Origin: Scyliorhinus canicula
Taxonomy: Eukaryota
Assembly (NCBI RefSeq): GCF_902713615.1
Contig: NC_052153.1
Coordinates: 8,071,569-8,135,568, forward strand
DNA length: 64,000 bases
Reading direction: 5' to 3'
Part shown: piece by piece, positions 16,596 through 63,881 of the stretch
How positions within the stretch are numbered: the stretch's first letter is position 1
Layout of the letters: every line of letters starts with the position of its first letter
Made by a program: the position numbers and the translations under genes
The notes under the pieces: generated by a model
What the model saw: only the letters and a program-made list of their open reading frames with translations
The model's database searches: none
What the model was told of the DNA's origin: nothing

Positions 16596-17278
16596 TCTCC
16601 ATTGTTACTGTTTTACCTGATGTTTATGTAGTTTAACGACTTGGATTCAGAAGCCTAACTGGTTGTTTAAATTGTAGCTACTACGTTCTGATTTCTCCCT
16701 CCATGTACCCGAACATCACCGGAGTGTGGTGACTAGTAACTGTGGTCACAGTAACTTCATTGCAGTGTTAATGTAAGCGTACTTGTGACGATACAGATTA
16801 TTACTACTTTTTTAAGGGAAGTTGTTGAACTGTGTTCATACATTAGGTATTGGAGCTGTGTGTACCCACAGAGTGTATGAAACATTAGTTAGAGCCAAAT
16901 TGTTTCTGATTTTAATAATTTAATGCATTATAGTAACACCAATTTGCATTATTTGGTGCTTTTAATACCGTAAGGTCTGAGGTACTTTACAGGAGTGATT
17001 GTGAAACAAAATTTAACAAGTGATCCACATGAGATAATACATCAGTTGACCAGCAGCTTGGTGATTTCAAGGAGTATCTTAAAGGAGAAGATGGGGGTAG
17101 AGAGTTTTAATGAGGAACTACCACAGCTTTTAGTCTTGGCAGCCCTAGGTTTGGATGCCAGTGTTGGAAAGCTGGGATGAAGTCGTGGCCAGAATTGGAG
17201 GAGTGCAGTTGTAAGGCTAGAGGAGATTATGTATACAGAGGGTGACCTTACTGAGTAATTCATTTTTTGTCTTCTAGC

Positions 17279-17411
17279 ATGATGCGGGTTTGTTGGTTGG
17301 TGAGTAAAGATGGGAGGCACCAACCGATACGACTGGCGCACTCGGTTTGCGTGCTGATTGGAAGAAGTCCCGAAACCCAAATTACAGATAGAAAATGCTC
17401 ACGGCATCAAG
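17279..17411 (+). CDS. APTX: Aprataxin coding exon 1 (FHA domain start); full CDS is 1068 nt, 355 aa over 7 exons
   Basis: ttctag|cATGATG; [44 protein letters not shown]; donor G|gtaacc. Confidence 0.95.
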
Positions 17412-17578
17412 GTAACCTCACCAGTTGATTTGACAGCTGCTTGTGCTATAATGAATAAATCAAAAACTGCCGATTAAAGCCTGTGCTAATCAGACTCCTT
17501 GCATTTGTTAATGAGAAAACGGGTAAAAATGGTAGAATAATCACAACATTTTCAGTCTAATAAAATGGAGGCAGAGTT

Positions 17579-17800
17579 GGGCAGCACGGTGGCGCAGTGG
17601 TTAGCATTGCTGCCTCACGGCGCTGAGGTCCCAGGTTTGATCCCGGCTCTGGGTCACTGTCCGTGTGGAGTTGGCACATTCTCCCTGTGTTTGCGTGGGT
17701 TTCGCCCCCACGACCCAAAGATGTGCAGGCCAGGTGGATTGGCCACGCTAAATTGCCCCTTAATTGGAAAAAATGAATTGGGTACTCTAAATTTTAAAAA
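17579..17800 (+). mobile_element. V-SINE, short A-rich tail; further copies ~6268, 14833, 21805(-), 24135, 26715, 29955(-), 31180, 33100, 41578, 43183, 50680
   Basis: 15-bp TSD aaaatggaggcagag; A/B boxes and V-domain. Confidence 0.85.
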
Positions 17801-19021
17801 ATGGAGGCAGAGCTTTTGTTCTGAAAGCATTGAACTCTAACGTTGAGTACAGAGGCTGTAAAACGCTTCATCAAAAGATGAGGTGCTGTTTCTTGAGCTT
17901 CGTTAGGACAGAGAGGTGAGGAAATTAAAGTGACATGTAGCCACAAATTCAAGGCCATGCTTGCGATCATTCAGTCTGCGTTTTGTTTAACCTGTGTAGA
18001 GGAGACTATATCGTGACCAGCGAAGACCACATGTGACCCAAAATCAAACACACTCCATATGATCCTGTTGGCTAAATGATAATCATGAACTATTTTAATA
18101 CTGTGTATAAACAAAGTTAGCTTAGTATATGAATTGAGTAGGGGACTGGTTAGCTCAGTTGGCTGGATGGCTAGCATGTGATTCAGAACAACGGCAACAG
18201 TGCAGGTTCGATTCCTGTTCCCACTCAAGTAGACTTTGGGACCCGCTTCTTCGCCATGGCTCCCGAGAGTGGATGGCAATGGCAAACCACCACTAACAAA
18301 CAAAACTGCAATATAAACAACTCAGGATGAAGCATCAGTGGACAATGAGCCAAGAAGTTGCTTTGGGGAGAGGACACAAGTGAAATGGATTGAGTATGAA
18401 CTCTAAAGCACTGGTCGTCAGAAGGAATACATTAGACAAAACTTGAAGTGTCACACGGGAACAGGTAGATATGTTTGTCTACCTACGGTTTGACTAAATT
18501 TATTGAGCCATGGCTAGAGTTGGGGAGGGCAGGGATTGTGGGGGTCAGATGTGTATGTCACGAGTATTTAATGTTGCCAACTTTTAACTTGCTGATGAGC
18601 CCTGGGACTTGTACAAGATTTATTAATGTCTACTTTTCGTTTTAGTGTAGAGTACCAGCAATACAATAAAATCCACTGAGTCTCAAATTAGTTCTAAAGA
18701 GGCTGGCACAGGCATGATGGGCTGAATGGACTTACTCCACTGATTCGTATGATGCCCCAGATCTTCCGGTCTTTGGATAGTCAGAGACTGGACATAATTC
18801 CCAGGATACGCAATGAGATCTCTCGGAAGTTCTGATGCAATGACTCTGTGGGAATTGCTCACGAATTTTGAACGTCTGATGGGCAATTACCATGTTTCCT
18901 GGGCCCCTGCCTAACTCTTTAGTTAGAGTCACAGACTTTGTACAGTTCCAACTTATTTGCCTGGATAGATACCCAGGAAATGTTCGAAAATTCCTATAAC
19001 TGCTGGGTAACTGTACAGCTG

Positions 19022-19054
<33 letters not shown>

Positions 19055-19709
19055 CCCACCAAGTTGAAGTGACATGGCCCAACCTCACTAACCTACTCGT
19101 CCGCCCAACCTGATCCCCCAAACAAACTACTCCACTACTCTCTTGACCCGACTTCACCAGCTCAGCCTTCCCCGTCTCAACCTCACCACCCACTCATTAG
19201 CCACCCTTCCCCTTCCCCACACTACCTACTTATCCTACCTCCTCTACCCTGTCTCCCATCGTTATGTCCTTACCCACCCTATCCCCCTGATCTTACCCCC
19301 CCTCCTTACTCACTTAACTTTTCCCAGTAGCTTTCCAAAGAAGCTTTGGGATATTTGAACTCTCTACTTAGCAGCTGGTGCTGTAACTGGGGAGGTGGCG
19401 TCTGCATGGATTTCCCTTTGCTCCCTGTGAGGGTTGCTGTAGTGAGTCAGTTTGGAAGGATCCTCCATCGGTCGTTGGCCAGAAAAATCAGTGGACAGTA
19501 AGCAGGTATTTTATTATCCGTTCAGGATCAGAAATAGGTTTCCGCTCCTGATTGGAAGAGTTGTGTCTACAATTTTGTGAAATGTCAGAAATGAGGCTAA
19601 TGGTGTTCTTGCCTAGACTTATATGGAGAGGAATGGTAAAATGAGAAATTTAAAGGTAATTTCAGCAGATGGGGAAAATTAGCTTATAACTTTTTCTATT
19701 GTTTTCCAG

Positions 19710-19756
19710 TACAGCTGAAAGCAGATTACAATAAGGGATATGTTCTTGTAAAACAG
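19710..19756 (+). CDS. APTX: Aprataxin coding exon 2
   Basis: ttccag|TA...CAG|gtatag; (V)QLKADYNKGYVLVKQ, 47 nt. Confidence 0.93.
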
Positions 19757-20375
19757 GTATAGTATCTGTGCTTTGTTTCTTTAGTGTGTTTTCATGTGGC
19801 TAATGGACATGTTCAAATTTGAGGGGCTTTGAAACTGTTCCCACTGGCAGGAGGGTTGGTAATCAGAATTAAAATAATTACTTTGGAGACTTGGCGAAAG
19901 AACCCAGAGGGGGAGATGTCTTTTAAGCAATGGTTAATGGGCTGAAATGTTCTGCCCATTTAAGAAAAGCAGGGGGTATTGAGACTAACTCTGGTCAAAG
20001 AGCCAACACTGAAATGATGAGCCAAATGGCTTCCTTCTGTCCATGATCTTCTTTAAGTATGGCTTTAGATTAAATTACGTTGCCTAAATCAATGACTGGC
20101 GTAAAATGCTTACTAAAGAAGTTGCTGAAATGTGTGGTGGTCGATATGCTTCCTTTTTGCTTTGGATGCACATTCAGTGAAGAACAATTACTCAAATCAG
20201 GAAGTTGGTTAAATTCCTACAAGTTGATTGATTAAAATAATTCCTGGCTTAGCTGAATGGATGAAATGGTGGAATCAAATGTAAGTAGGATTAGGTCCTG
20301 ACATCTTTACTGAGTCATTATGGCCATGTTCTGTTGTGCCTGATTATGTACTTCCAGTTAAAAGTCTGTCTTGAA

Positions 20376-20835
20376 CTGGCCTTTGCGTCCCTAGTAGCCC
20401 GGCGAAGGATCTTGCTACAATGGAAGGATGCGAGGCCCCCAAGCGTGGAGACCTGGATCAATGACATGGCGGGTTTCATTAAGCTAGAGAAGATCAAATT
20501 CGCCCTGAGAGGGTCGGTACAAAGGTTCTTTAGGCGGTGGCAACCTTTTCTCGACTTTCTGGCTCAACGATAGGGTACTGGGACAGTAGCAGCAGCAACC
20601 CGGGGAGGGAAAAGGGGGGGGGCCGACAATGACTATGTTTGTTTATTTAATTTTAATATTTTTTAAAGTTCTTTTGTTGTTCCTTTGGGTTGGGGGGGTG
20701 GGGGGATGTGATACATGCGCCGATACGGTCTGGGGGTGTCACAGTTATTATGGGTTATTTTGTTGCATTTCATTGTTTGTCGTTATGTTTTATATTTTCT
20801 GTAAAAAATTCCAATAAAAATTATATTTATAAAAA
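20376..20835 (+). mobile_element. 5'-truncated L1 copy in an APTX intron
   Basis: Nearly identical to 49628-50100; A tail; 16-bp TSD aaaagtctgtcttgaa. Confidence 0.9.
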
Positions 20836-21040
20836 AAAAGTCTGTCTTGAAGCTGTTGAGGCTTAAATATCTACATACCACTCCTCTCAAAACAGGATTG
20901 GATAAATAATTCTAAGGCAAGGTACTATGGAAGCTTCAAGTGTGAAATCCAAACAGAAAATTTCTGGAAATACTCTGTAGCTTTCGAAAACTAATTATAT
21001 TTTGTTTTCCCGCCTCCCTCACCTCTCCCTGTCTCCAAAG

Positions 21041-21385
21041 TTGGGTATAAATCCGAGCTATGTCAATTCTGACGGTTTGGGAAGAGATCAGGAGGTGAAG
21101 CTAATGCCGGGACAGATCCTTCACGTTGTTAATCGGCATTACCCGTACACCATCCAGTTTGAGGGAGAGACTTCAGAGAAGGAGAGGCTGCCGCCAAAGA
21201 GACCACACAAAGAGATTTCTCCAGACAGCAGCGCCAACACTTTGAATAAATATCTTAAGGCCAAAGACTCCAATCCAAGGGAGCAGCACACGTTTAACAC
21301 TAAGCCCAAAGAGAAGAACCAGGGTGGGCACACAGCAGAAGATAGCAGCAATTCAATGACTCGGATCAACTCCGCTGAGGCCTGC
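21041..21385 (+). CDS. APTX: Aprataxin coding exon 3 (FHA end and linker)
   Basis: ccaaag|TTG; LGINPSYVNS...DQEVKLMPGQILHVVNRHYPYTIQFE; phase-0 donor TGC|gtgaga (alternative AAC|gtaatt at 21394). Confidence 0.88.
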
Positions 21386-22189
21386 GTGAGAAACGTAATT
21401 GATGGGTTGGGTTTAACTTGAGTCCTCTTACCAGTGATATGGTTGAAATAGCCCCACCTTCATTTACTGTGTGCGGAGTCTGCATGTTCTCCCCGTGTCT
21501 GCGTGAGTTTCCTCCGGGCGCTCCGGTTTCTCCCACAAGTCCCGAAACACTTGCTTGTGAAGTGAACTGGACATTCTGAATTCTCCCTCTGTGTACCCGA
21601 AACAGGCACCAGTGTGTGGTGACTAGGGGATTTTCACAGTAACTTCAATGCAGTATTAATGAAAGCCTACTTGTGACAATACAGATTATTATTATTGTAC
21701 CTCAATGTCCAACACCTTGATGGGATTTGAACCCATATCGCCAACGCATTAGCCTAGGCCTCTGGATTACTAGACAATGACACCATTCTCCTAAAGTTCT
21801 AGTTCTTTTTTTAAAGTTTAGAGTGCCCAATTCATTTTTTCCAATTAAGGGGCAATTTAGCGTGGCCAATTCACCTACCCGGCACAACTTTGGGTCGTGG
21901 GGGTGAAACCCACGCAAACACGTGTTGAATGTCCAAACTCAACACGGGCAGTGACCCAGAGCCGGGATCGAACCTGGGTAATTGGCGCCGTGAGGCAGCA
22001 GTGCTAACCACTGCGCCACCATGCTGCCCTTAAAGTTCTAGTTCTAACTATGGTCGCAAGTCTTCAGTGTGATCTCAAATAAAAAAATTTTAAATTTTAG
22101 AGTAGCCAATTATTTTTTTCCAATTAAGGGGCAATTTAGCGTGACCAATCCACCTACCCTGCACATCTTTGGGTTGTGGGGATGAAAGC

Positions 22190-22511
22190 GGCCTTCAAAA
22201 TGGCCACGAACATATTTTAAAAATTCAGCCGCACAGCGCATGCTTGCCCGATCATCGGTGCGTATACACAAAACTATCCGCATGCGCACTGATGATCGGG
22301 CACACGAGCAGTGCGGCCGCATTTTTTAATACGGTCACAGCCTTTTTTTTTACAAGTTCGGGGGGCCAAAGGGACCATTGTGGTCAAAGGGAGCCAAAAC
22401 CATTCCTCCATTTTTGTCGGCCACAAATAAGGTAAGAGAAAATGGTGGGGGCCGTGAAGGTTGGCCGGTTGGTAAAAATGGGTCCCCAGAAAATAAGTTT
22501 GAAAAACACTG
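22190..22511. mobile_element. hAT-like non-autonomous fragment
   Basis: Terminus agtttgaaaaacactg resembles hAT/Charlie TIRs; only one end seen. Confidence 0.4.
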
Positions 22512-22929
22512 GGTAGTGGTTATGTTACTCCACCAGTAATCCAGAAGCCTAGACTAATGATTCAGACACTTGAGTTTAAATCCCACCTCGCCAGGTTGGT
22601 AATTTTAAATTCAGTCAATGAAATAAGGATGGAATAAAAGTAATGGCGACCTTGAAATAACTGGATCGTTGTAAAAACCAATCTGGTTCACCAGTGTCCT
22701 TCAGGGAAGGATGTCTGTCATCCTTGCCCAGTCAGGCCTGGAGGTGATCCTAGTTAGCTTTGAAAGGACCAATCCACTCGATTGCATTCAACAAGGCAGC
22801 TCACTATCACTTCCTTGAAGGAAATGAGGGATTTCCCCAACATCTGCAGAGTTATGATTATCTAGAAAGTGGGATATCGTCCAAGTGTCTATACGTTGGA
22901 TAAATGTCATTCCTACTTTGTTCCTTTAG

Positions 22930-22989
22930 GATTTTCAGGGAATGTGGAGCCAGGGACTAAAAGTTTCCATGCAGGATCCAAAAATGCAG
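22930..22989 (+). CDS. APTX: Aprataxin coding exon 4
   Basis: ttttag-type acceptor |GAT...CAG|gtatac; DFQGMWSQGLKVSMQDPKMQ, 60 nt. Confidence 0.95.
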
Positions 22990-23130
22990 GTATACAAATA
23001 TTTATTAACCCGAAAATCCCACCTAAAATAATCATGGTTTTATTTGTAGCACATTTGGTGCAAATATCATTTCAATTTTTACATTGCTTTTATTGGTCAA
23101 TGAGACTTATTATTTTTCTTTCTCCGGCAG

Positions 23131-23357
23131 GTGTATAAAGATGATACAGTTGTTGTAATTAGGGACAAATATCCAAAGGCCCGTTTTCACTGGCTGGTTT
23201 TGCCTTGGGAGTCCATAGCCAATCTGAGGGCTGTGAAGAGGGATCACTTAACTCTACTTCAACACATGCATCAAGTTGGCCAGAAGCTGGTGCGAGAATG
23301 TCTGGATTCTGACACATTGAAATTCCGTTTGGGTTATCATGCTATTCCTAGCATGAG
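23131..23357 (+). CDS. APTX: Aprataxin coding exon 5 (HIT domain)
   Basis: ggcag|GTG; [26 protein letters not shown]...[11 protein letters not shown]; AG|gtgaga. Confidence 0.96.
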
Positions 23358-23579
23358 GTGAGAGGAGTTTGTTTTCACAATGACACCTGTGGCCAGCCCT
23401 TGGTTGGAAGCATCTAAAACTGCAGCATGCTCCAGGGTTTCACAGTGACTAGTCAGTAGAGCGAACACCTGGAGAATTTGGTTTTCCTGCCCCATCTGTA
23501 TTAAAACACACAGATTTAAATTAGCCTGCGGACTGTACTAAGTTGTACGTTTATAATGATGCCTTATCATACCCCTCAG

Positions 23580-26000
23580 AAACGTTATGTACACATATGG
23601 TGAGGTAGTCACACCGCAGGCTCAGACTCCGCAGGTAGGAAGGGAATGGGTGACCACCAGACAGAGCAAGAGAGCCAGGCAGATAGTGCAGGAATCTTTT
23701 CTGGCCATTCCCTTGCAGAACAGAGATACCATTTCGGATACTGGTGAGGGGAATGGCCTCTTAGGAAAACAGCAACAGCCAAACCTGTGGCACCACGGTT
23801 GGTTCTGCTACAGAGGGGAGGGGTAATAAGTGTGCCAGTGCAATAGTTATAGGGGACTCAATTGTAAGAGGAATAAACAGGCGTTTCTGTGGCTGCAAAC
23901 GAGACTCCAGGATGGTATGTTGCCTCCCTGGAGCTAGGGTCGAGGATGTCTTGGAGCGAGTACAGGACATTCTGGAGGAGGAGGGTGGACAGCCAGTGGT
24001 CATGGTACACATCGGTACAAACGACATAAGTAAAAAAGGGGTTGAGGCCCTAAAAGCAGAATACAGGGAGCTAAGAAGGAAGTTAAGAAATTGGACCTCT
24101 CGGGGATTACATGCTGGTCAGGAGTATAAATGAATTGCTGCCTCAAGGCGCCGAGGTCCCAGGTTCGATCCTGGCTCTGATCATTGTTCATGTGGAGTTT
24201 GCACATTCTCGCCGTGTTTGCGTGGGTTTCGCCCCCACACCCAAAGATGTGCATGTTAGGTGGATTGGCCACTCTAAATTGCCCCTTAATTGGAAAAAAT
24301 GAATTGGGTTCTCTAAATTTATAAACAAGAAGTAGAAATGACAGGATATGTTGGATGAATACGTGGCTGAAGAGATGGTGTGAGGGGGAGGGTTTCAGAT
24401 TCCTGGGGCATTGAGACTGGTTCTGGGGAAGGTGGGACCTGTACAAACTGGACGGGGGCAGGACTGGGATTGATGTCCTCGGGGGGGGCTATTTGCTAGA
24501 GTGATTTAGGAGGGTTTAAACTAATATGCCAGGGGGATGGGAACAATGCAAGGAGTCAAGAAGAAATTAACCCAATAGTGAGAAAGGATATTAGCTCTGA
24601 CAATGTGGAGTCTGTATGGGTAGAGTTGAGAAATACCATGGGGCAAAACATATTAGTGGGTGTCATATGTAGACCCCACTGATGTGGGAATGGCATTAAA
24701 CACAAAATTAGAGATGCATGTAATAAGGGAGTATCGGTGATCATGGGTAATTTTAATCTTCACATAGATTGGGCAAATCAAATTAGCCACAATGTCGTAG
24801 AGGAGGAATTCCTGGACTTTATATGGGCTGGTTTTCTTGACCAGTAAGTTGAGGAACCAACTAGAGAGCAGGCCATCTTAGACTGAGAACTGTGTAATGA
24901 GAAGCGAATCATTGCCAATCTGGCTGTGCGACACCCCTTGGGGATGAGCGACCATAACATAGAATTTTTTATCACGGTGGAGAGTGAAGTAGTTGATTCG
25001 GAGACTAGGGTGCTGAATCTTAACAAAGGAAATGCAGGAGATGAGGCATGAGTTGGCCTTGATAGATTGGGGAGAGTTACCTAAAGGGATCACAGTGGAT
25101 AGGCAATGGCAAACATTCAAGGAACGCATGAGGGAACTGCAGCAACTGTTCATTCCTGTCTGGCACAGAAGCAAAATGGGTAAGAGGGCCAATGTGTGGC
25201 TTACCGATTGGCCAAGAAAAATAATAGATCTGAGGACTGGGAGCAGTTTAGAATTCAGCAAAGAAGGACAAAGGGATTGATAAAGAAGGGGAAAATACAG
25301 TATGAAAATAAGCTTGTAGGGAACATAAAGACTGACACTAAGAGTTTCTATAGATATGTGAAGAGAAAGAGATTGGTAAAGTGAAATGTAGGTCCCTTGT
25401 AGACAGAAACAGGGGAATGCATAATAAGGGACAAAGAAATGGCTGAGCAATTGAATACATAATCTTTTTATTATCACAAGTAGGCTTACATTGACACTGC
25501 AATGAAGTTACTGTGAAAAGTCCCTAGTCGCCACATACTGGCGCCTGTTCGGGTACAGAGAGAGAATTCAGAATTCTCAGCTGGTACGGGAATTGAACCC
25601 GTGCTGGCCTTGTTCATACTTTGGTTCTGTCTTCACAAAAGAGGACACAAATCAGATACCAGAAATGCTGGAGAATGAAAGGTTTAGTGAGAGGGAAGAA
25701 CCGAGGGAGATCAATATTAGTAGAGAAATGGTGCTGGAAAAATTGTTGGGATTGAAGGCGGATAAATCCCCAGGGCCTGAGAATCTGAATCCCGAGTGCT
25801 TAATGAAATGAAAATCGCTTATTGTCACAAGTAGGCTTCAAATGAAGTTACTGTGAAAAGCCCCTAGTCGCCACATTCCGGCACCTGTTCAGGAAGGCTG
25901 AGGAGGTTCTGGAAATAGTGGATGCATTGGTAGTCATCCTCCAGGATTCTATGGACTCTGGAACACTCTCTACAGATTGGAGGATAGCTAATGTCTCTGG
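23580..26000 (+). mobile_element. Degenerate CR1 LINE (esterase-type ORF1 and ORF2 endonuclease) in an APTX intron, with SINE insertions
   Basis: VCCLPGARVEDV...VHIGTNDI (SGNH esterase of CR1 ORF1); LGMSDH and KSPGP motifs. Confidence 0.8.
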
Positions 26001-26486
26001 ATTACTAGTCCCATGTCATTACCAGGGGCTGGTTTAGCTCACCAGGCTAAATCACTGGCTTTTCAAGCAGGCCAGCAGCACGGTTCGATTCCTGTACCAG
26101 CCTCCCCGGATAGGCGCCGGAATGTGGCGACTAGGGGCTTTTCACAGTAACTTCATTGAAGCCTACTCGTGACAATAAGCGATTTTCATTTTCATTACCA
26201 CAACACCACCATCTTTTAAATTGCCTATCTCTCAATCTGAGACTGTGCCCCCTTATTCTAGATTGTTCAGCTAGAGGAAACAATCTCTTATTATGTACCC
26301 CGTCAAACCCCTTAAGAATTTTCTGTCTTTCACTGAGATCACCAAAATTACACTCATCCTAATTTGAACAGAGCATTGATTGTAAAATGTTGCAGAATTT
26401 TAAGAATTAGATGATTTGGTAGAAAGCAGCAAGATATAGAATATTTAGTCACTTTTTTTTTTCTCTCTCCTGTGCCCTTTTACCAG

Positions 26487-26590
26487 CCACGTTCACCTTC
26501 ACGTGATCAGTCAAGACTTTGATTCCCCCTGCTTGAAGAATAAAAAGCACTGGAATTCATTTAATACAGATTATTTCCTTGAATCGGAAG
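26487..26590 (+). CDS. APTX: Aprataxin coding exon 6 (HIT catalytic motif)
   Basis: taccag|C; [34 protein letters not shown]; G|gtaaac. Confidence 0.97.
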
Positions 26591-28193
26591 GTAAACAGAG
26601 CATCATTACATCATTGTGTGCTCATCGTTTCTGCATTGGATGCCCTCCCAGTGTGTCTGCTGTGGCTCAGTAAATGGCATGCTCATCTCTGAATCAGAAA
26701 ATTCTAGACTCTTAGGAGCAGCACGGTGGCGCAGTGGTTAGCTTTGCTGCCTCACGACGCCGAGGTCCCAGGTTTGATCCCGGCTCTGGGACACTGTCCG
26801 TGTGGAGTTTGCACATTAGAACATACAGTGCAGAAGGAGGCCATGTGGCCCATCGAGTCTGCACCAACCCACTTAAGCCCTCACTTCCACCCTATCCCTG
26901 TAACCCCATAACCCCTCCTAACCTTTTGGCCACTAAGGACAATTTATAATGGCCAATCCACCTAACCTGCATGTCTTTGGACTGTGGGAGGAAACCCACT
27001 CAGACACGGGGAGAACGTGCAGAGTCCGCACAGACAGTGACCTAGCGGGGAATCAAACCTGGGACCCTGGTGCTGTGAAGCCTCTGCTAGTCAGTTGTGC
27101 TACCTTGCTGCCCTGAATTCTCCCCATGTTTGCGTGGGTTTCACCCCCACAACCCAAAGATGCACAGACTAGGTGGATTGGTCATGTTGAATTGCCCCTT
27201 AATTGAAAAAAGTTAATTGGGTACGCTAAATTTAAAAAGAAAAAGAAAATTTTCTACTCTTTTACTCCAGAGCATAATCCGTGATGAGGCTGATAATCCC
27301 AGTGCAGTACTGAGGGAGTGCTGTACTTCAAGAGGTGCCATCTGCGTGAGATGAATCCCCAGCCTCTGACTTGCTCTTGTAGCCACAATATATATTGGCT
27401 GATCTACTTGAGGTTTCTGGTCAATGATGAGGGGAATTCAGTGATGGCAATGCTGTTGAATGTCATGACGAGATGGTTAGATTCTTTATTGTTTAAGGTA
27501 GTCATTGCCTGGTACTTCAGCGGTATAAATGCTATTTTCTACTCATTGCAAACCGGAACATTATCCATTGTTGCATGCGGGTCTAGACTAGTTCATTACC
27601 TGAGGTGTTACGCATGGTACTAACCACCGTACCCATCAATGAACTTCCCCACTTCTAACCCAATGATGAAGGGAAGGGTATTGTGGAGGTAGCTGAAGAA
27701 AAATAAAGGCAGAGGTGTGGCACTAGGTGAAGTGCTCCCTGAGAGGGTCAGCACAGACCGAATGACCGAATGTGCTGTAGCCATTCTGTGATTCTATGCT
27801 CTCAGGTGGTTGTGCCTAGGACTAGCCTGAGGAACTCCTGAAACAATGGCCTGGGACTGAAATGATTGGCCTCCAACAACCACAACCGTCCTCCTTTGTG
27901 TTTAGTCAAGCCGCAGCCAGTGGAAGGTTTTCCCTCTCACTCATGATGTGCCAAGAAGGATTGAGAATCCTGAATGAGAGGATGGGTCTCCCCTCCTTCG
28001 GTTCAGATAATATTCCAGACATTTTCCCTGCTGTTGACCGGGGGCTTTTGCACCGTCCAGCTGACTGCTTTAGAACTTAAATGTTGCCAGCTTATTTCTT
28101 TTTATAAAATTTGGACAAACAAGAAGCTAAAAGCCGTTCTTACCGTTTAATAACACCAATATAATGTTCATGCTTGTTTTTAAACTCCACTAG

Positions 28194-28345
28194 ATGTGAT
28201 GAAGATGGTAGAACAAGATGGAAAGGTGACAGTCAAGGATGGAATGGCTGAGCTATTAAAACTGCCACTTGTGTGCCATGTCTGCCAGCAGCAACAATCC
28301 ACCATTCCACAGTTGAAAGATCATTTGAAAAAGCATTTGCCTTGA
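28194..28345 (+). CDS. APTX: Aprataxin last coding exon (C2H2 zinc finger)
   Basis: cactag|AT; [49 protein letters not shown]; ATTAAA at 28556-28561. Confidence 0.95.
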
Positions 28346-28370
28346 AATATTCAGCTGTCCGTCTCTTTTC

Positions 28371-28411
<41 letters not shown>

Positions 28412-28599
28412 ATGAAGCATTCTGGTGAAATACCCCCAGTTGTGGAACAGTACAATATAGCCTAGTGAAAGGGAAAATGTATGATTTGATTTAATTTAAC
28501 CTAATTTGTTTACAAAAGATTCATTCTAATTTTCTGCACGCTTGATGTTTATTTTATTAAAAGAGCATCATTCATAATCCGTGTGTAATTGATATGCAG

Positions 28600-33574: not shown

Positions 33575-33681
33575 AGTAAGAAGTCTTACAACACCAGGTT
33601 GCCCAACAGGTTTGTTTCAAATCACTAGCTTTCAGAGCACTGTTCCTTCCTCAGGTGAATGAAGAGGCGGGTTCCAGAAAC

Positions 33682-33720
<39 letters not shown>

Positions 33721-40045: not shown

Positions 40046-40656
40046 ATAACTTTCAAAAGGAATTGGATAAATATTTGAGGAGAAACAATTACAGGGCTAT
40101 GGGGAAAGAGCGGGTGGGTTGGCACTAATCGGCTAACTCTTTCATAGAGCTTGGACAGGCCAAGTGGTCTCCTCCATAGAATCCCTACAGGGCAGGAGGA
40201 GCCAATTCGGCCCATCGACTATGCACCAACCCTCCGAAAGAGCACATTCTTAGATCCCCTCCCCCGGCCTATCCCCGTAACCTAACCTAACCTGCACATC
40301 TTTGGACACTAAGGGACAATTCAGCATGGGCAATCCATCTAACCTGCACATCTTTGGACTATGGGAGGGAACCGGAGCACCTGGAGGAAACCCATGCAGT
40401 CACAGTGAGAAAGTGCAAACTCCATACAGTCGCTCAAGGCCAAACTTGAATTTGGGTGCCTGGCATTGTGAGGCAGTGGTACTAAGCACCGTGCCACTGT
40501 GTACTATATTATTCTGTGATAACCCATAGACCTCTGATTGGCAAGTTGTATGCTGGAGTTTATTTGGATACTTGTCATGTTTTTGCTGTCATAACTAATG
40601 CTTTATTATCACTCTGGCACCCAATTTTCAATTTGTACTTAAAAAACGTCTTTAGC

Positions 40657-41152
40657 CAAGGGTTCTTTAAACGGTGGCAACCTTTCCTCGACTTTCTGGC
40701 CCAAGGGTTCTTTAAACGGTGGCAACCTTTCCTCGACTTTCTGGCTCAACGATAGGGTACTGGGACAGTNNNNNNNNNNNNNNNNNNNNNNNNNNNNNNN
40801 NNNNNNNNNNNNNNNNNNNNNNNNNNNNNNNNNNNNNNNNNNNNNNNNNNNNNNNNNNNNNNNNNNNNNNNNNNNNNNNNNNNNNNNNNNNNNNNNNNNN
40901 NNNNNNNNNNNNNNNNNNNNNNNNNNNNTTATTTTATTTAAATTTGATTTATCTAATTTTAATTTATGGTTAAGTTCTCTTGTTTGGGGGGGGGGGTGGG
41001 GGAATGTGATACATGTGATGTTACGGTATGGGGGGAATTGTGGGTGTTATGGGGCTGTTAGTTGCATATTACTGCTTTTTGCTATACTTTTTGTTATATT
41101 TTCTGCAAAAAATTCCAATAAAAAATTAAAAAAAAAAAAAAACAAAAAAAAA
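40657..41152 (+). mobile_element. 5'-truncated L1 3' end (contains a 159-N gap)
   Basis: FFKRWQPFLDFLAQR*; A tail; TSD aaaaaacgtctttagc. Confidence 0.85.
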
Positions 41153-45390: not shown

Positions 45391-46046
45391 GTCTGGGGAC
45401 ACACTATGGCCGTTGCTGTTTTCGCTGTTGCTGTTCTTCAATTTTGACACGTGTTTTTTTTACGCTGGTTTTCTTTTTGCTCTGTTTCCGGGTGGGTTTG
45501 TCTGTTGGGTATGGGTGTGGTGTATGTGGGGAACGTTGGGGGTATGTGCTTTATATGTTCTCTTCTGTACGGGGCTGGGGGTTGGGGTGAAACTGGATTT
45601 TGAGGAGCTGCGTCAGAAGGGTGGGGTGTGGCAGTGTGAAAGCGCGGGCTTTCCTCTGGTTGTCCGCGCTGCGGGGCGGGGGGGGGAGCTGGAGGTGGGG
45701 GCGTGGCCTCTACTGGTTTTCTTTCCCGCGCTGAAGCGGTGCCAAGGAGGTGTGGCAAGAGGGGGATGACCCCATGCCGGGAGGAGATGGGTTTTGGCAG
45801 GAGCTGCCGGGTCAGCAGAAGTCAGCTGACTCACGGAAGTACCATGGAGGGTGCGTCGCGGCTAGGAGGGGTCCTAGCCTGGGAGGGTGGGGGGGGGGGG
45901 GGGGGGGGGATGGGGGGGATACCGTTGCTGGAATGGCCAGGAAGGAGCTGGTGTGGGCCGGGGGGGGGGGGGAGAGGAGAGGCGTTATCGCCATGGGGAA
46001 CGGGTCAGGCGGGGCGAGCTGGCCTGGGGCGAGCAGTCGATAAGCT

Positions 46047-49000: not shown

Positions 49001-49824
49001 AGGGACCTGTTTATTGATGGGAGGTTTGCAAGCCTGGGGGAGTTGGAGGAGAAATTTGGGCTCCCCCGGGGAACATGTTCAGGTATCTGCAGGTAAAGGC
49101 ATTTGCTAGGCGGCAGGTGGAGGGATTCCCTTCGCTTCCCGCGAGGGGGGTGAGCGACAGGGTGCTTTCGGGGGTCTGGGTCGGAGAGGGGAAGATATCT
49201 GATATCTACAAGGTTATGCAGGAGGCGGAGGAGGCGTCAGTAGAGGAGCTGAAAGCTAAGTGGGAGGGGGAACTGGGGGAACAGATCGAAGACGAGACAT
49301 GGGCTGATGCCCTGGAGAGGGTTAATTCTTCCTCCTCGTGTGCGCGGCTTAGCCTCATCGAATTCAAGGTGCTGCACCGGGCCCACATGACTGGGACGAG
49401 GATGAGTAGGTTCTTTGGGGGTGAAGACAGGTGTGTCAGGTGCTCGGGGAGTCCAGCGAACCATGCCCATATGTTCTGGGCATGCCCGGCACTGGAGGAG
49501 TTCTGGAAGGGGGTGGTGAGGACGGTGTCGAGGGTGGTGGGATCCAGGGTCAAGCCAGGATGGGGACTCGCGATTTTTGGGGTTGGGGTGGAGCCGAGAG
49601 TGCAGGAGGCGAAAGAGGACGGTGTGCTGGCCTTTGCGTCCCTAGTAGCCCAGCGAAGGATCTTGCTACAATGGAAGGATGCGAGGCCCCCAAGCGTGGA
49701 GACCTGGATCAATGACATGGCGGGTTTCATTAAGCTAGAGAAGGTCAAATTCGCCCTGAGAGGGTCGGTACAAAGGTTCTTTAGGCGGTGGCAACCTTTT
49801 CTCGACTTTCTGGCTCAACGATAG
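46047..49824 (+). pseudogene. L1 ORF2 (APE endonuclease, RT, C-terminal zinc knuckle), frameshifted
   Basis: TWNVRG, LQETH, VNVYAPN, GGDFN, SDH, GPDGFP, LDAEKAFDRVEW, GTRQGCPLSP, RYLGV, C..C...HMFWAC; catalytic YADD reads YVGD. Confidence 0.88.
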
Positions 49825-51034
49825 GGTACGGGGACAGTAGCAGCAGCAACCCGGGGGGGAGGGGGAGGGAAAAGGTGGGGGGGGGGGGGCGGAGGCGGAC
49901 GATAACTATGTTTGTTTATTTAATTTAAATTTATTTTTAAGTTCTTTTGTTGTTCATTGGGGTTGGGGGGGGGGGGATGTGATACATGCGTCGATACGGT
50001 CTGGGGGTGTTACAGTTATTATGGGTTATTTTGTTGCATTTCATTGTTTGTCGTTATGTTTTATATTTTCTGTAAAAAATTCCAATAAAAATTATATTAA
50101 AAAAAAAGAAAATCCTTTCATGGGATGTTGGTGTTGAGTAGCTCTTGTGAAGGTGATGGCGAGCCACCTGCTTGAACTGTTGCACTCGATGTGGTGTGGG
50201 TATTCTACCAAATGAAGGACGATGGCTGTTTTGAAGGGGCGGTGGGCAGAGGGTTATGTGGATACCAAGTTCTGGGGATTGGGAATGAAGGGAGAAAGCA
50301 GTGGGTCTTGTGGAGCAATTGAGTTCAGAAGGGGCACGGGGAGATAACAGGGGACACATAGAGGGAGTTAGGGCATTGAAGCTGAGGTTTGAGTTAGTGA
50401 GCTGGGTGAAGGGGAGGGCGTGGTGGGGCGGGCGAGCTGTGGGGATCGGTGGTGCAGAGCAGATGCAGTGAAAAAGGTTTAGTTCACTCATTAAATGTTT
50501 ATATTATGAAGAAAGGTTGAACAGTTGGGCTTATACCCATTGAGATTTAGAAGAACGAGAGCTGATCTTATTGGAACATGTAAGACCCTGAGGGGATTTG
50601 AAAGGGTGGATACCCAGAGGATGTTTCCTCTTGCGAGGGAGACTAGAACGTGAGGCACAGTTTAAGAATAAGACGTCTAGGGCAGCACGGTGGTGCAGTG
50701 GGTTAGCCCTGCAGCCTCACAGCGCCGAGGTCCCAGGTTCGATCCCGGCTCTGGGTCACTGTCTGTGTGGAGTTTGCACATTCTCCCCATGTCTGCGTGG
50801 GTTTCGCCCCCACAACCCAAAGATGTGCAGGGTAGGTGGATTGAACACGCTAAATTGCCCCTTAATTGGAAAAAATGAATTGGGTACTCTAAATTTATTT
50901 TTAAAAAGAATAAGACATCTCCCTTTTAAGGCAGAGATGAGATGAGGAGAATTTTTCTCGCTCAAATGGTTGTTAGTCTGTGGAATTCTCTTCCCCAGTG
51001 AGCAATGGAGTCTGGGTCAGTCAATTTATTCAAG

Positions 51035-51398
51035 GCAGAATTATAGAATTTACAGTGCTGAAGGAGGCCATTCGGCCCATCAAGTCTGCACCGACTCTTG
51101 GAAAGAGCACTCTACCCAGGTCCACACCTCCACCCTATGCGTATAACCCAGTAACCCTACCCAACACTAAGGGCAATTTTGGATATTAAGGGCAACTTAA
51201 CATTGCCAATCCATCTAACCTGCACATCTTTGGACTGTTGGAGGAAACCGGAGCACCTGGAGGAAACCTAACCCTAACCCACGCAGACACTGGGAGAATG
51301 TGCAGACTATGCACAGACAGTGACCCAGCCGGGAATCGAACCTGAGACCCTGGAGCTGTGAAACAATTGTGCAAATCACTATGCTACCGTGCTGCCCA
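51035..51398 (-). mobile_element. V-SINE with CR1-like tail; similar copies ~26817-27113 (-), 40175-40500 (-), 52412-52725 (+)
   Basis: V-domain plus tail gatgggccgaatggcctccttcagcactgtaaattcta. Confidence 0.7.
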
Positions 51399-53496: not shown

Positions 53497-54762
53497 ATGA
53501 AGTCATCGAATTTACACATTCGGAAATGTTCTTTACCCATCGGGGTTCTCTGCAGGAAATACCCCTCCAATACCACTCAATCGGTAAGATCAGAGCCCAG
53601 GATGTCGTCCTTCTCTTCAATAGACAGCCATAGCATCCATCCTGCCAGGATGATCAAGGAGATCAGGGCACTGATGATTGACATGGGCACGGGCTACTTC
53701 AAAGCAGGGTTCGGTGGCCAGGCCAAGCCTTCAGTGGTCATCTCTTCCACGGTGGGCAGGCCCATGCAGCGAAGCGCCAAGACCGGGGACAACCGGCAGG
53801 AGAACTTTGTGGGCAGTGAACTGAGAGCCCCCTTTGAGCTGCGGCTCATCAACCCCCTCCGGCATGGCATCGTGCTGGACTGGACTGGCGCCGAGGCTCT
53901 CCTGTGCTACATCTTCGATAAGGAGCTGAAGGTGCGGCCCGAGGACCACGCCGTGATGGTGGCTGACCCACCCCTCAGCCCCGTTACTAACCGCGAGAGG
54001 ACGGCTGAGCTCCTCTTTGAGGCCTTCGGCATCCCAGCCATTCACATCACCAGGCAGTCACTGCTCTCCATCTATGCCTATGGGTGCACTAGTGGGCTGG
54101 TGGTAGAGAGCGGCTTTGGCTCAAGTTGTGTGGTCCCCATCCATGAAGGTTATATTATGCCGCACATCACTGCTACCGTCGACTATGGGGGAAGCGACCT
54201 CACCAAGTACTTGCTCAAACTTATCAACCACAATGGTTACAAGATAGGTGCCAGTGAGTATCATTTGGTGGAGAAGATCAAACAGGAATATTGTTACACT
54301 GCCATTGACTTTGACAATGAAATGCGTAGTGAGACTAAAGAGTACACAGCACACTATGAACTTCCAGATGGTAAGATTATCACAGTTGGTAAAGAAAGGA
54401 TCAAATGTCCCGAGGCCCTCTTCAATCCATCACTCATGGGCTCCAGAGAGGCTGGGCTGCACACAATGGCTCTGAACATCATCAATAAATGTGACCCCAG
54501 CCTGCTCGAGGAAATGTACAAAAACATCCTCCTCTGTGGAGGCTCGACCATGTTCTCCGGATTCCGCGTTCGTTTCCAGAAGGAATTAAGGAAACTGGTG
54601 CAGGATATGAACCCACAAGTTCAAGCAATTCCTGAGAGGAAATATTCAGTCTGGTATGGAGGGTCAATCCTATCCTGCCTCAAATCCTTTCAACAACTTT
54701 GGGTTAGCAAAAAGGATTATGATGAGCGCGGACCACTGGCCATCTATAGGAAATGTTTCTGA
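53497..54762 (+). CDS. ACTL7B: Actin-like protein 7 paralog (7B-like), intronless, 421 aa
   Basis: gccATG start; actin fold; FGIPAIHITRQSLLSIY, SGLVVESG, QQLWVSK and AIYRKCF resemble recalled ACTL7B; shares AKTGDNR with 7A. A/B orthology is not proven. Confidence 0.75.
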   Translation: MKSSNLHIRKCSLPIGVLCRKYPSNTTQSVRSEPRMSSFSSIDSHSIHPARMIKEIRALMIDMGTGYFKAGFGGQAKPSVVISSTVGRPMQRSAKTGDNRQENFVGSELRAPFELRLINPLRHGIVLDWTGAEALLCYIFDKELKVRPEDHAVMVADPPLSPVTNRERTAELLFEAFGIPAIHITRQSLLSIYAYGCTSGLVVESGFGSSCVVPIHEGYIMPHITATVDYGGSDLTKYLLKLINHNGYKIGASEYHLVEKIKQEYCYTAIDFDNEMRSETKEYTAHYELPDGKIITVGKERIKCPEALFNPSLMGSREAGLHTMALNIINKCDPSLLEEMYKNILLCGGSTMFSGFRVRFQKELRKLVQDMNPQVQAIPERKYSVWYGGSILSCLKSFQQLWVSKKDYDERGPLAIYRKCF

Positions 54763-54880
54763 AGCTGAAGTTTTAATCACTTTTGACCTTTTTTTTAAAA
54801 ACAAAAAACACATTACAGATTTCCATTGTTGAATGTAACTTAAATTAATTGGAGAAAAACTTTTAAAACCATGGAAACAG

Positions 54881-54886
54881 AATAAA
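54881..54886 (+). terminator. Polyadenylation signal of the second ACTL7 gene
   Basis: AATAAA ~120 nt after the stop, followed by a GT-rich tract. Confidence 0.65.
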
Positions 54887-55019
54887 GTCTTATAACTTTG
54901 TGTGATTATTGAAATGGATGATATGGTGATGGGAGTTGAGATGTGATTGCAACAAAGGTCTTGGCTTGAAATTCCACTGGGATCTTTTGACGTCGGGAAT
55001 TAAGGCTGTAGGATGTGCA

Positions 55020-55337
55020 TAGGGTTGCCAACGGTGACTAAGTGTATTCCTGGAGGTTTCATCTGGTGTTTGACACCCCCCCCCCCCCCCCCCCCCCCCC
55101 CCACTCCAGCCATTAATTGACCAACACATCCATCATTGTCACATATTCCTTCTACCTAACGGGAGTAAAAAGTCTGCTTGGCCGTTAGCCTCTCTTTTTC
55201 AATATCAGGTCAAATGAAATATTCAAACAAAATTACACACAAAAAAATCTATTTTAATGCCCCTATGATTTTTCTCCAGTGTTTCAACTCAATTCCTGGA
55301 AACTCCAGGCCAATCCTGGAGGGTTTTGGCAACTCTA
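55020..55337. mobile_element. hAT MITE
   Basis: TIRs tagggttgccaa / ttggcaactcta; 8-bp TSD gatgtgca (55012-55019 and 55338-55345). Confidence 0.8.
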
Positions 55338-56373
55338 GATGTGCATGTGAACTGTAACAAGACCAGAAGTGGAGTTGGGTCTGGCTAGTCTGCATGATGC
55401 TTAGACCAATGTATATAGTCAATTGTTCTGTCCATAGTCTGAACAGGCCAGTGCATTAGCGAAACGTTTCATTTCTTTTGATAATGTTCATTGATGTTCA
55501 TTTAAATACTATTACAATTTAGATTGTTTTACTGGGTTTTAACTACCCACCTTTTATTGTCGCACTTCATTCCAATTGACTCTGAAAAGAGTTTTCCCAC
55601 CCCGCCACCAATTAAGTCAGACTCACCATGTGGAGGACATGACAAGCAAACCTTGGCATGTTTGCTTGCAGGCTCCTGGGGTGGGCACTCAGTGCCTGAC
55701 TGGGAGACCTGGCAGAAGGTGGGATGGGGAGGGGGAGCTACTGAGAGCCACCTCCCTGTCCTTCCTGTTCTGCCCCACCCCACAAACACCGTCCTGTGAC
55801 ATCCACACACCGTCCTTGCCACCACTCACCTGTGCATGGGCCTCTTCTCCATCTGAAGCTTTGGGTGAGTGTAGTACCAGCAGCAGCCATTGCCTCCTCT
55901 GTGCTACTGCTGAGTATTAAAGCAAAGGAGAACCTCCCTCAACTCCCCTCCAGGGGTCCATGATACTGAGTGCCACGGGTTACCACAGCAGACCTTTTCA
56001 AAAGAGGCAGTGTGAGGGTCGCAATGACTCTACAGCCAGTGGTCCAGATCCCTGTTGGCTCCATAAGATTCCACCCGTTGTTACTTGTCACATGACTCTA
56101 GTGCAGGAGTTCTCAACCTTTTTTAACCCATGGACCCCATTTCCTCTTAATTTTTTTTGTGGACCCCCATAGCCATTCCACAGAAAAAAAAGCTTCTTAT
56201 ATGCGTGGTAAACTAATCCTTATATTTTGTCCGATGACTAAAGTCCATCTACCTTACCGTGAGGGTTGGAAACGGATTAGCGGTATTTTCGTACGTTGCC
56301 AAACTTATTCTAATATGAAAAGTAATGAAAAAAACTTTTTACTAAATTGAATTAAATTACTCTAATTAAGTCT

Positions 56374-57094
56374 AGTGCAACAATAAATGAGGCATCCTCG
56401 GATATATATCAACATAACAATTAGTTCTTAGCTCTATGTGAATAATATAACATCCCTCTTCCTTTAAAAAGTGTATTTATATCAATATAACTGTTCAATC
56501 ATTTTCTTCTCTCTACTAAAGAAGCTTTAACAATCAACTCTTATAAATAAACGGAATACTTTTGAGGGTCTTTTACGGTTTTCTTTCCCTAAAAGCATTA
56601 TTGAGCATATCACTTTGGTGCTTGGATGTTGTGTCTCCACCTTGTGTATTTGGCATTCGTCACTCTCAGTGATGAGTTGGCACACTGCACAGGTGATGTT
56701 ATGCATGTTGCTCCTGGTGGAGTCACAACTGATTTTGCTGGTGATGTTGTCTCATTAGTCAGAGCGATGTTGCTGGTCTGGTTGGGATCTTTTCTGCTTT
56801 TCTAGCTCAGGTGCTGGATTCTGTTCCATCTCATTTTCCTCACTAATTTTGGTCTCAATGATGTGTGATCTTACAGCCTCAGCTACCCCAACAACTTCTG
56901 CTGGGTTCCAAGTTATGATTGAATCCGGTACATATAAAGTATGTCATTTCAATAGCTCAGGTAATGACTTAGCATTCTTGTTGAGGTGTTGACCTTTTAC
57001 CTGTGCTTAATTAAGTTGTTATCTTGCTTCCTCATGGTCACTGGGAGGGAATATGTTGCTTTCCAGACTTGTTGTTATATTCTCTTCCATTTAA
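56374..57094 (-). mobile_element. 3' part of the Gypsy element begun at 12857: integrase tail, PPT and 3' LTR start
   Basis: Minus strand begins LNGREY...NKNAKSLPELL...TWNPAEV; PPT aaaggaagaggga then tgttatattattcacatagagctaagaactaattg at 56452. Confidence 0.75.
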
Positions 57095-57594: not shown

Positions 57595-57724
57595 CCCCAA
57601 ACACCCACCCCCTCCCTCTTTCCCCCCCCCCCAACACCCACCCCCTCCCTCTTCTCCCCCCCCCAACACCCCGCCCCATCCCTTCTCCCCCCCCCCCCCC
57701 CCCCAACACCCCGCCCCCCCCCTC

Positions 57725-63880: not shown

Positions 63881-63881
63881 C

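What the first reader, a model, noticed from the sequence alone, without database searches (positions are those of the whole stretch)
16596..57094. The 40.5-kb segment between the two 500-N gaps appears to be inverted
Three lines of evidence. (1) Seen: sequence left of gap 1 ends atgaaatcacca-aa-gagctg (MKSP[A]EL). The reverse complement from 57094 starts ttaaatggaaga (LNGR). Joined, they give the Gypsy integrase motif SPAELLNGR and continue to a PPT. (2) Seen: the LTR start at 12857 (+), tgttatactattattcgtaaagagctaggaactaattg..., aligns with the minus strand from 56452, tgttatattattcacatagagctaagaactaattg.... LTRs of one element must be direct repeats, which holds only if the segment is flipped. 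(3) Knowledge plus inference: flipping puts the 5' end of APTX against the gap before the DNAJA1 exon, restoring the head-to-head APTX/DNAJA1 layout of human. Because the breakpoints coincide with gaps, a scaffolding error is most likely; a real or heterozygous inversion is not excluded.
Basis: partly seen in the sequence, partly recalled or inferred. Interest (0 to 1): 0.85.

Follow-up and report, generated by a model that had tools for sequence, protein, structure and literature searches.

The report
Mis-oriented 40.5-kb scaffold piece
The 40.5-kb block between the two 500-N gaps of this shark scaffold is almost certainly placed backwards by the scaffolding software, so this is an assembly error to correct and not a biological inversion.

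Summary

- **Read evidence.** One 578-nt read-derived contig from public run X13 covers window 56850-57094 (+). It continues without a single intervening base into 16095-15763 (-). This is exactly the predicted junction 16095 | revcomp(57094).
- **Element continuity.** The same junction restores a degenerate Gypsy-like integrase (SP-EL | LNGR) with no indel. It also puts the PPT and 3' LTR start in direct orientation with the 5' LTR start, which matches over 94 bp at about 80%.
- **Gene order in relatives.** Four chondrichthyan assemblies share APTX -> ACTL7-like 'up' -> ACTL7-like 'down' on one strand. In the little skate alone, the continuation ACTL7-down(-) ACTL7-up(-) APTX(-) DNAJA1(+) SMU1(-) was seen directly. 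The window matches these layouts only after 16596-57094 is flipped.
- **The 159-N gap.** It lies inside one LINE 3' end that is colinear across it, so both sub-contigs flip together.
- **Cause.** 500 Ns is the default join of 3d-dna and SALSA2. Both cut input contigs and often mis-orient short pieces (PMC9292758, PMC7672694, PMC6719893).

One new point: only the last DNAJA1 exon is present (60079-60291). Exons 1-8 and the APTX/DNAJA1 promoter region are therefore missing at gap 2.

A real inversion in the reference animal is unlikely (about 4%).

The parts
9442..10890 (-). Intronless ACTL7-like actin gene #1 in the left flank. It is the orthologue of the 'downstream' actin gene of other chondrichthyans.
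   Evidence: Intact 482-aa ORF. Pfam Actin E 2.9e-111. 77-84% aa identity to the downstream actin gene of L001-L003.
12857..16095 (+). 5' part of a degenerate Gypsy-like LTR element: 5' LTR start (12857-~12950), gag-like and protease-like remnants, and integrase zinc-finger and core remnants. It ends inside the SP-EL motif at the contig end.
   Evidence: Sequence and three-frame translations. LTR match. Pfam found no domain in the short ORF pieces.
16096..16595 (.). Gap 1, a 500-N fixed-length scaffolder join. The true neighbour of 16095 is revcomp(57094) with 0 bp between.
   Evidence: 500 Ns is the default of 3d-dna and SALSA2 (PMC9292758).
16596..57094 (.). The 40,499-bp block (two sub-contigs joined by a 159-N gap) that is placed in reverse orientation relative to both flanks.
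   Evidence: Run X13 contig of 578 nt: letters 1-245 = 56850-57094 (+), letters 246-578 = 16095-15763 (-). Gene order in relatives.
17279..28345 (+). APTX coding exons, from the start-codon/FHA exon 17279-17410 to the zf-C2HE last exon 28190-28345. The 5' end lies only about 690 bp from the contig end at 16596.
   Evidence: Pfam FHA_2 2.8e-16, DcpS_C 3.5e-24, zf-C2HE 3.4e-13. Motif scans.
40770..40928 (.). 159-N sized gap inside the 3' end of a LINE copy. The sequence on both sides is colinear and on the same strand.
   Evidence: 40702-40769 matches 20520-20587 (94%) and 49771-49838 (93%). 40943-41141 matches 20638-20839 (72%) and 49911-50112 (74%). All matches are +/+. APTX (left of the gap) and ACTL7-like #2 (right of it) keep the order and strand seen in four other species.
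53497..54762 (+). Intronless ACTL7-like actin gene #2. It is the orthologue of the actin gene that lies directly downstream of APTX in other chondrichthyans.
   Evidence: Intact 421-aa ORF. Pfam Actin 5.7e-100. 72-79% identity to the 'upstream' actin gene of L001-L003. Named relatives are actin-like protein 7A/7B of sharks and rays.
56358..57094 (-). 3' part of the same Gypsy-like element: integrase C-terminal region starting with LNGR at 57094, purine tract 56465-56453, and 3' LTR start from 56452.
57095..57594 (.). Gap 2, a 500-N join. It hides real missing sequence: the APTX upstream region, the intergenic region and DNAJA1 exons 1-8.
   Evidence: Skate DNAJA1 (P0231) matches the window only at residues 328-399.
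60079..60294 (+). Last coding exon of DNAJA1, with AG acceptor and TAA stop.
   Evidence: tblastn 85% identity to skate DNAJA1 residues 328-399. Splice site and stop.

Best explanation
The block 16596-57094 is a short sub-scaffold of 40.5 kb (two contigs plus a sized 159-N gap). A Hi-C-type scaffolder placed it in the right position but in the wrong orientation, between two fixed 500-N joins.

The true local order is: left flank (...ACTL7-like #1, 5' half of a dead Gypsy-like element) | revcomp(57094...16596), carrying the 3' half of the same element, ACTL7-like #2 and APTX, all on the minus strand | missing sequence (APTX upstream region, DNAJA1 exons 1-8) | right flank (DNAJA1 last exon).

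Shown: junction 1 exists with 0 bp between the two contig ends, and relatives have the flipped gene order.

Inferred:
- Because the two contig ends abut to the base, one original contig was probably cut in silico at this point by misjoin correction, and one piece was then re-inserted backwards.
- Junction 2 is a genuine gap of unknown length. In relatives, APTX-to-DNAJA1 spacing is about 9.4 kb (skate) and DNAJA1 spans 12-18 kb. If this species is similar, well over 10 kb is missing.
For: **Reads**
- Run X13 has one contig of 578 nt at depth 4.12. In one search it lies on 56850-57094 (+) with its letters 1-245, 0 mismatches. In one search it lies on 16095-15763 (-) with its letters 246-578, 1 mismatch. 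245 + 333 = 578, so nothing lies between.
- No contig in four runs from three studies joins 16095 to 16596. Contigs reaching 16596 (X13 380 nt, X2 271 nt) continue for 201 and 151 letters that do not lie on the left flank.

**Transposable element**
- A conceptual translation with X at the breaks aligns across the junction, without any indel there, to an in-window integrase C-terminal ORF (3-563). Score 62 against 25.4 +/- 3.8 for shuffles.
- The LTR starts match only in the flipped orientation.

**Comparative gene order**
- APTX(+) -> actin 'up'(+) -> actin 'down'(+) in Mustelus asterias, Pristis pectinata, Leucoraja erinacea and Callorhinchus milii.
- Window gene #2 is orthologous to 'up' and #1 to 'down'.
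- In Leucoraja, APTX(-) lies 9.4 kb head-to-head with DNAJA1(+), followed by SMU1(-).
- The two window flanks (ACTL7 #1 minus, DNAJA1 exon plus) agree with each other. Only the block disagrees.

**Integrity of the block**
- The LINE 3' end is colinear across the 159-N gap.

**Mechanism**
- 500 Ns is the default join of 3d-dna and SALSA2 (PMC9292758).
- Short contigs are often mis-oriented by Hi-C scaffolders (PMC7672694; PMC6719893).
- SALSA2 splits suspect contigs into left, junction and right pieces.
- There are no inverted repeats at the breakpoints that could drive a real inversion.
Against: - The junction is seen in only one contig of one run (X13, depth about 4). X13 is probably not the animal that was assembled, because X2 fits the window best.
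- X1 has a contig that runs 11 letters past 16095, but the tool did not show those letters.
- Junction 2 (revcomp 16596 | 57595) could not be tested. 57595-57730 is C-rich low-complexity sequence, and the sequence between is missing.
- The assembly's own pipeline, AGP file and Hi-C map were not available, so the in-silico cut is an inference.
- In human and mouse, ACTL7A and ACTL7B are head-to-head (PMC6642428), as in the unflipped window. However, four chondrichthyans have them in tandem, so this does not count against the flip here.
Confidence: 0.9

Rival explanations
1. A real inversion of the ACTL7-like #2 / APTX block exists in the sequenced individual, fixed or heterozygous. One breakpoint lies inside the old Gypsy-like integrase and the other just upstream of APTX. 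The assembler broke at the breakpoints, and the scaffolder happened to choose the derived orientation.
For: - Contig ends coincide to the base with the ancestral junction. A heterozygous inversion could also produce this through a branch in the assembly graph.
- X13 is probably a different animal from the reference (mismatch counts).
Against: - In X2, the run closest to the window, the contig reaching 16596 continues leftwards for 151 letters that are not the left-flank end. X13 does the same for 201 letters. The shown junction is therefore not a clean breakpoint.
- No inverted repeats lie at the two ends.
- Both boundaries are fixed 500-N scaffolder joins.
- The second boundary starts in low-complexity sequence and lacks more than 10 kb of expected genes. 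That is typical of an ordinary assembly gap.
- The flipped order is conserved across Chondrichthyes.
Confidence: 0.04
2. Only the right sub-contig (40929-57094) belongs, inverted, next to the left flank. The left sub-contig (16596-40769, with APTX) was wrongly attached to it across the 159-N gap, and its true orientation or place is independent.
For: - The read evidence touches only the 57094 end.
- The 159-N gap lies in a LINE family with at least three copies in the window. Its tandem and poly-G region could be a systematic contig-break site.
Against: - The flanks of the 159-N gap are colinear and on the same strand within one LINE 3' end.
- APTX followed by ACTL7-like #2 on the same strand is exactly the order in four other species.
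- After a whole-block flip, APTX faces DNAJA1 as in the skate.
- A sized gap implies paired or long-range evidence.
Confidence: 0.04
3. The shown orientation is correct. The two retroelement halves belong to two different copies of one family that happen to end at the gaps.
For: The LTR match alone is short (94 bp, about 80%), and Pfam recognises no domain in the degraded ORF pieces.
Against: - A single read-derived contig crosses the predicted junction with no base between.
- The integrase alignment crosses the junction without an indel.
- Gene order in relatives.
Confidence: 0.01

Closest known systems
Local orientation errors of short contigs in Hi-C scaffolding (3d-dna, SALSA2)
   Same: - A piece of about 40 kb lies between two uniform 500-N joins.
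- It keeps its correct position between its neighbours but is reversed.
- The contig ends abut to the base, as expected after an in-silico misjoin cut (PMC9292758, PMC7672694, PMC6719893).
   Different: The assembly's actual pipeline and Hi-C map were not seen. One of the two joins (gap 2) is also a true gap with genes missing, so the repair is not a simple flip.
Conserved chondrichthyan gene block ACTL7-like / ACTL7-like / APTX / DNAJA1 / SMU1
   Same: After the flip, the window has the same genes in the same order and strands as Leucoraja erinacea. It also matches the parts of the block seen in Mustelus, Pristis and Callorhinchus.
   Different: Spacing is much larger in the window (APTX to ACTL7-like #2 is 25 kb against 4-5 kb) because of LINE, SINE and LTR insertions. 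DNAJA1 exons 1-8 are not assembled here.
Polymorphic or heterozygous chromosomal inversion
   Same: Two orientations of one block are in play: the assembly has one and run X13 has the other.
   Different: There are no inverted repeats at the ends. No reads support the shown junctions. Both boundaries are scaffolder joins.
Human APTX/DNAJA1 divergent gene pair on 9p21.1
   Same: After the flip, the APTX 5' end faces the DNAJA1 side. The aptx-dnaja1-smu1 neighbourhood is shown across tetrapods in PMC3583005, and the skate has the head-to-head layout.
   Different: The DNAJA1 5' end itself is not in the window. The human coordinates come from my own knowledge and were not tested here.

Membership tests
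Scaffolder orientation error (mis-oriented contig) | The piece is bounded on both sides by fixed-length scaffolder gaps. | tested here: met
   Exactly 500 N at 16096-16595 and at 57095-57594. 500 Ns is the default of 3d-dna and SALSA2.
Scaffolder orientation error (mis-oriented contig) | Raw-read evidence supports the alternative (flipped) junction. | tested here: met
   X13 contig of 578 nt = 56850-57094 (+) followed directly by 16095-15763 (-). This is one contig from one run.
Scaffolder orientation error (mis-oriented contig) | No read evidence supports the junctions as shown. | tested here: inconclusive
   No joint 16095->16596 or 57094->57595 appeared in four runs. Contigs run on into other sequence. 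Logan contigs show presence, not absence, and the gaps may hold unknown sequence.
Scaffolder orientation error (mis-oriented contig) | The flipped order is colinear with related genomes, and the two flanks agree with each other. | tested here: met
Scaffolder orientation error (mis-oriented contig) | The Hi-C map or AGP file of the assembly shows ambiguous orientation or a cut contig. | not testable with these tools
   No access to the assembly's Hi-C data or AGP file.
Ty3/Gypsy LTR retrotransposon (the split element) | Two LTRs in direct orientation that start with TG. | tested here: inconclusive
   Both start TGTTAT and align over 94 bp at about 80% in the flipped orientation only. The LTR ends and a target-site duplication were not found.
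Ty3/Gypsy LTR retrotransposon (the split element) | A polypurine tract lies directly before the 3' LTR. | tested here: met
   aaaggaagaggga at 56465-56453 (minus strand), directly before TG at 56452.
Ty3/Gypsy LTR retrotransposon (the split element) | pol carries RT, RNase H and integrase domains that profile models recognise. | tested here: not met
   Pfam gave no hit for seven ORF pieces. Integrase is recognised only by motifs and by alignment to ORF 3-563. No RT or RNase H remnant lies between about 14.7 and 15.5 kb. The name 'Gypsy-like' therefore rests on motif-level resemblance.
Inversion by recombination between inverted repeats (NAHR) | Inverted repeats lie at the two breakpoints. | tested here: not met
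   Only homopolymer tracts and SINE fragments under 50 bp are shared between the 3-kb breakpoint flanks.

The most novel reading that the evidence does not exclude
The assembled individual really carries, perhaps heterozygously, a 40.5-kb inversion of the APTX / ACTL7-like block. This would separate APTX from the upstream region it shares with DNAJA1 in a gene order otherwise conserved across cartilaginous fishes. The assembly orientation would then reflect one true haplotype.
Probability: 0.04. Interest if true: 0.45.

Novelty: not a real feature. Interest (0 to 1): 0.15.

Why it matters
As released, the scaffold would suggest a lineage-specific inversion. It breaks the conserved ACTL7-APTX-DNAJA1-SMU1 order. 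It places APTX tail-to-head with a lone DNAJA1 exon and splits one retroelement in two.

Anyone using this assembly for synteny, inversion calling, promoter analysis of APTX/DNAJA1 or gene annotation would be misled. DNAJA1 will come out truncated or missing here.

The fix is concrete: flip 16596-57094, close gap 1 to 0 bp, and look for the contig carrying DNAJA1 exons 1-8 to place at gap 2. Biologically the result is ordinary.

Tried and rejected
- **tblastn of ORF 3-563 against the junction pieces.** The in-window integrase ORF found nothing. It is too diverged for BLAST, so I replaced this with a Smith-Waterman alignment and a shuffle test.
- **Pfam on the degraded retroelement ORF pieces.** No domains were found.
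- **MAFFT of the two LTR regions.** It aligned about 90 bp only. Removing a candidate 274-bp nested insertion (56097-56370) extended the match by only about 10 bp.
- **Searches for the other DNAJA1 exons.** Motif scans, mammalian and invertebrate DNAJA proteins and a skate DNAJA1 found none in the window.
- **The ACTL7 counter-argument.** In the unflipped window the two ACTL7-like genes are head-to-head, as in human and mouse. I considered this as evidence against the flip. I rejected it because four chondrichthyans have the tandem layout.
- **SMU1 search.** tblastx found no SMU1 exon in 60292-64000.
- **ELP1 search.** tblastx for an ELP1 3' end in 1-9400, against the sequence beyond the downstream actin gene of relatives, gave only repeat-like hits.
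- **Chiloscyllium punctatum locus.** No neighbouring genes lie within 10 kb, so it is uninformative.
- **Callorhinchus DNAJA1.** P0328 is not on record.


Full report
**Observation.** The window has three N runs: 16096-16595 (500), 40770-40928 (159) and 57095-57594 (500). The left contig ends in ...atgaaatcaccaaagagctg. The reverse complement from 57094 begins ttaaatggaaga. It runs through about 640 bp of degraded coding sequence to a purine tract (56465-56453), followed by TGTTAT at 56452. The sequence from 12857 (+) also begins TGTTAT. By BLAST it matches the minus strand from 56447 over 75 bp at 77%, the only such match in the window. By local alignment it matches over 94 bp at about 80%, score 88 against 23 +/- 3 for shuffles.

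**The element.**
- Three-frame translations show gag-like and protease-like remnants, two SINE insertions and an integrase zinc-finger and core remnant on the + strand up to 16095.
- That strand ends in ...ADMKSP, a 2-nt remnant of one codon, then E-L.
- The minus strand from 57094 starts L-N-G-R and continues with the C-terminal integrase region.
- Pfam does not recognise the short ORF pieces, and no RT or RNase H remnant was found. 'Gypsy-like' is therefore a motif-level label.
- I read the two halves through with X at each break and aligned them to an intact integrase C-terminal ORF of another element in the window (3-563). The alignment starts at the shared S-P and crosses the junction without an indel. 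It continues for about 85 residues, score 62 against 25.4 +/- 3.8 for shuffles.

**Direct test of the junction.** Four public runs of the same species label, from three studies, were laid on 15096-17595 and on 56300-58000. Run X13 holds one contig of 578 nt at depth 4.12.
- Its letters 1-245 lie on 56850-57094 (+) with no mismatch.
- Its letters 246-578 lie on 16095-15763 (-) with one mismatch.
- The two parts add up to the whole contig, so 57094 and 16095 are direct neighbours on opposite strands, as predicted.

No contig joins 16095 to 16596 or 57094 to 57595. The contigs that reach 16596 (X13 380 nt, X2 271 nt) go on for 201 and 151 letters. Those letters lie neither on the left flank nor, as far as the listing shows, on 57595 onward. 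X2 fits the window best and may be the assembled animal. X13 is probably another animal.

**The 159-N gap.** The program's note asked that this be tested first.
- The last 68 bp before the gap match 20520-20587 (94%) and 49771-49838 (93%).
- The sequence from 14 bp after the gap matches 20638-20839 and 49911-50112 (72-74%).
- All matches are on the same strand.

The gap therefore sits inside one LINE 3' end that is colinear across it. No gene spans it, so reading frame is not an issue. In addition, APTX (left of the gap) and ACTL7-like #2 (right of it) keep the order and strand found in other species (see below). The block is one unit.

**Genes.**
- APTX is complete on the + strand of the block: 17279-17410 (FHA_2), about 21.1 kb, 23104-23358 (HIT), about 26.5 kb, and 28190-28345 (zf-C2HE and stop).
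- Two intact intronless actin-family genes exist: #1 at 9442-10890 (-) in the left flank and #2 at 53497-54762 (+) in the block. They share 59% aa identity. Their named relatives are actin-like protein 7A/7B.
- Right of gap 2 lies the last DNAJA1 exon (60079-60291, +), with a splice acceptor and a stop.
- A skate DNAJA1 matches the window only at residues 328-399. Exons 1-8 are therefore not assembled here.

**Comparison with other cartilaginous fishes.**
- Around the orthologue of #2, Mustelus asterias, Pristis pectinata, Leucoraja erinacea and Callorhinchus milii all show APTX(+), then actin 'up'(+) 4-5 kb later, then actin 'down'(+) 4-5 kb later.
- Window gene #2 is the orthologue of 'up' (72-79%) and #1 of 'down' (77-84%).
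- In Leucoraja, on the same chromosome record, APTX(-) lies 9.4 kb head-to-head with DNAJA1(+), which spans 11.9 kb. SMU1(-) follows.
- Amblyraja and Mustelus show the same DNAJA1-SMU1 pair.
- The full order ACTL7-down(-), ACTL7-up(-), APTX(-), DNAJA1(+), SMU1(-) was assembled from the two Leucoraja loci. The other species each show a part of it.

The window's two flanks fit this order. The block fits only when flipped. The mammalian head-to-head layout of ACTL7A/B (PMC6642428) does not apply to this clade.

**Cause.**
- 500 Ns is the default join of 3d-dna and SALSA2 (PMC9292758).
- Both correct 'misjoins' by cutting input sequences. SALSA2 cuts into left, junction and right pieces (PMC6719893).
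- Short pieces are the ones most often mis-oriented (PMC7672694).
- Two contig ends that abut to the base are what an in-silico cut leaves. This step is an inference.
- No inverted repeats lie at the two boundaries.

**Verdict.** The block is reversed in the assembly (confidence 0.9). The alternatives are:
- a real inversion in the assembled animal, about 0.04;
- a wrong join at the 159-N gap, about 0.04;
- the orientation as shown, about 0.01.

Gap 1 should be 0 bp. Gap 2 hides the APTX upstream region and most of DNAJA1. Relatives suggest well over 10 kb is missing there: DNAJA1 spans 12-18 kb, and 9.4 kb separates it from APTX in the skate.

Noticed in passing
window 57095-60291: Only the last DNAJA1 exon is assembled. 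Exons 1-8 (residues 1-327 of a skate orthologue) match nowhere in the window. Gap 2 therefore stands for a missing or misplaced contig, not a small gap.
   Followed up: yes
window 9442-10890 (-) and 53497-54762 (+); L001-L003, L005: Cartilaginous fishes have two intronless ACTL7-like genes in tandem directly downstream of APTX. In human and mouse ACTL7A/B are head-to-head (PMC6642428) and, from my own knowledge, lie on 9q31 far from APTX on 9p21. The chondrichthyan block links genes of both arms of human chromosome 9.
   Followed up: partly
window 13219-13520 and 14830-15030: Two SINE-like insertions lie inside the Gypsy-like element, with many copies elsewhere in the window at 74-86% identity. 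The element also seems to lack RT and RNase H between about 14.7 and 15.5 kb.
   Followed up: partly
window 56097-56370 (-): A candidate 274-bp nested insertion lies in the 3' LTR, flanked by a 9-bp direct repeat (tgcactaga). Removing it extends the LTR-LTR match by only about 10 bp.
   Followed up: partly
window 3-563 (+): An open 187-aa ORF encodes the C-terminal part of an integrase of another LTR element (SPVQLLLNR motif). It runs off the window start.
   Followed up: no
window 47400-50150 (+), 20295-20840 (+), 40650-41140 (+): One long LINE copy is present (RVT_1 at 47682-48206, 268-aa ORF 49018-49821), along with two further 3' ends of the same family. A 46-bp unit is duplicated just before the 159-N gap.
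   Followed up: partly
window 57595-58130: A C-rich low-complexity tract (57595-57730) is followed by several inverted copies of a unit of about 100 bp (cagtgtcaatttcagcgg...). Logan word depths reach tens of thousands, so this is a very abundant repeat.
   Followed up: no
window 16692-16860: Summed contig word depth reaches 2-8 x 10^5 in all four runs. The core of about 45 bp at 16746-16789 belongs to an extremely abundant repeat.
   Followed up: no
tblastx against the sequence beyond the downstream actin gene of three relatives gave only repeat-like hits, so I could not confirm it.
   Followed up: partly
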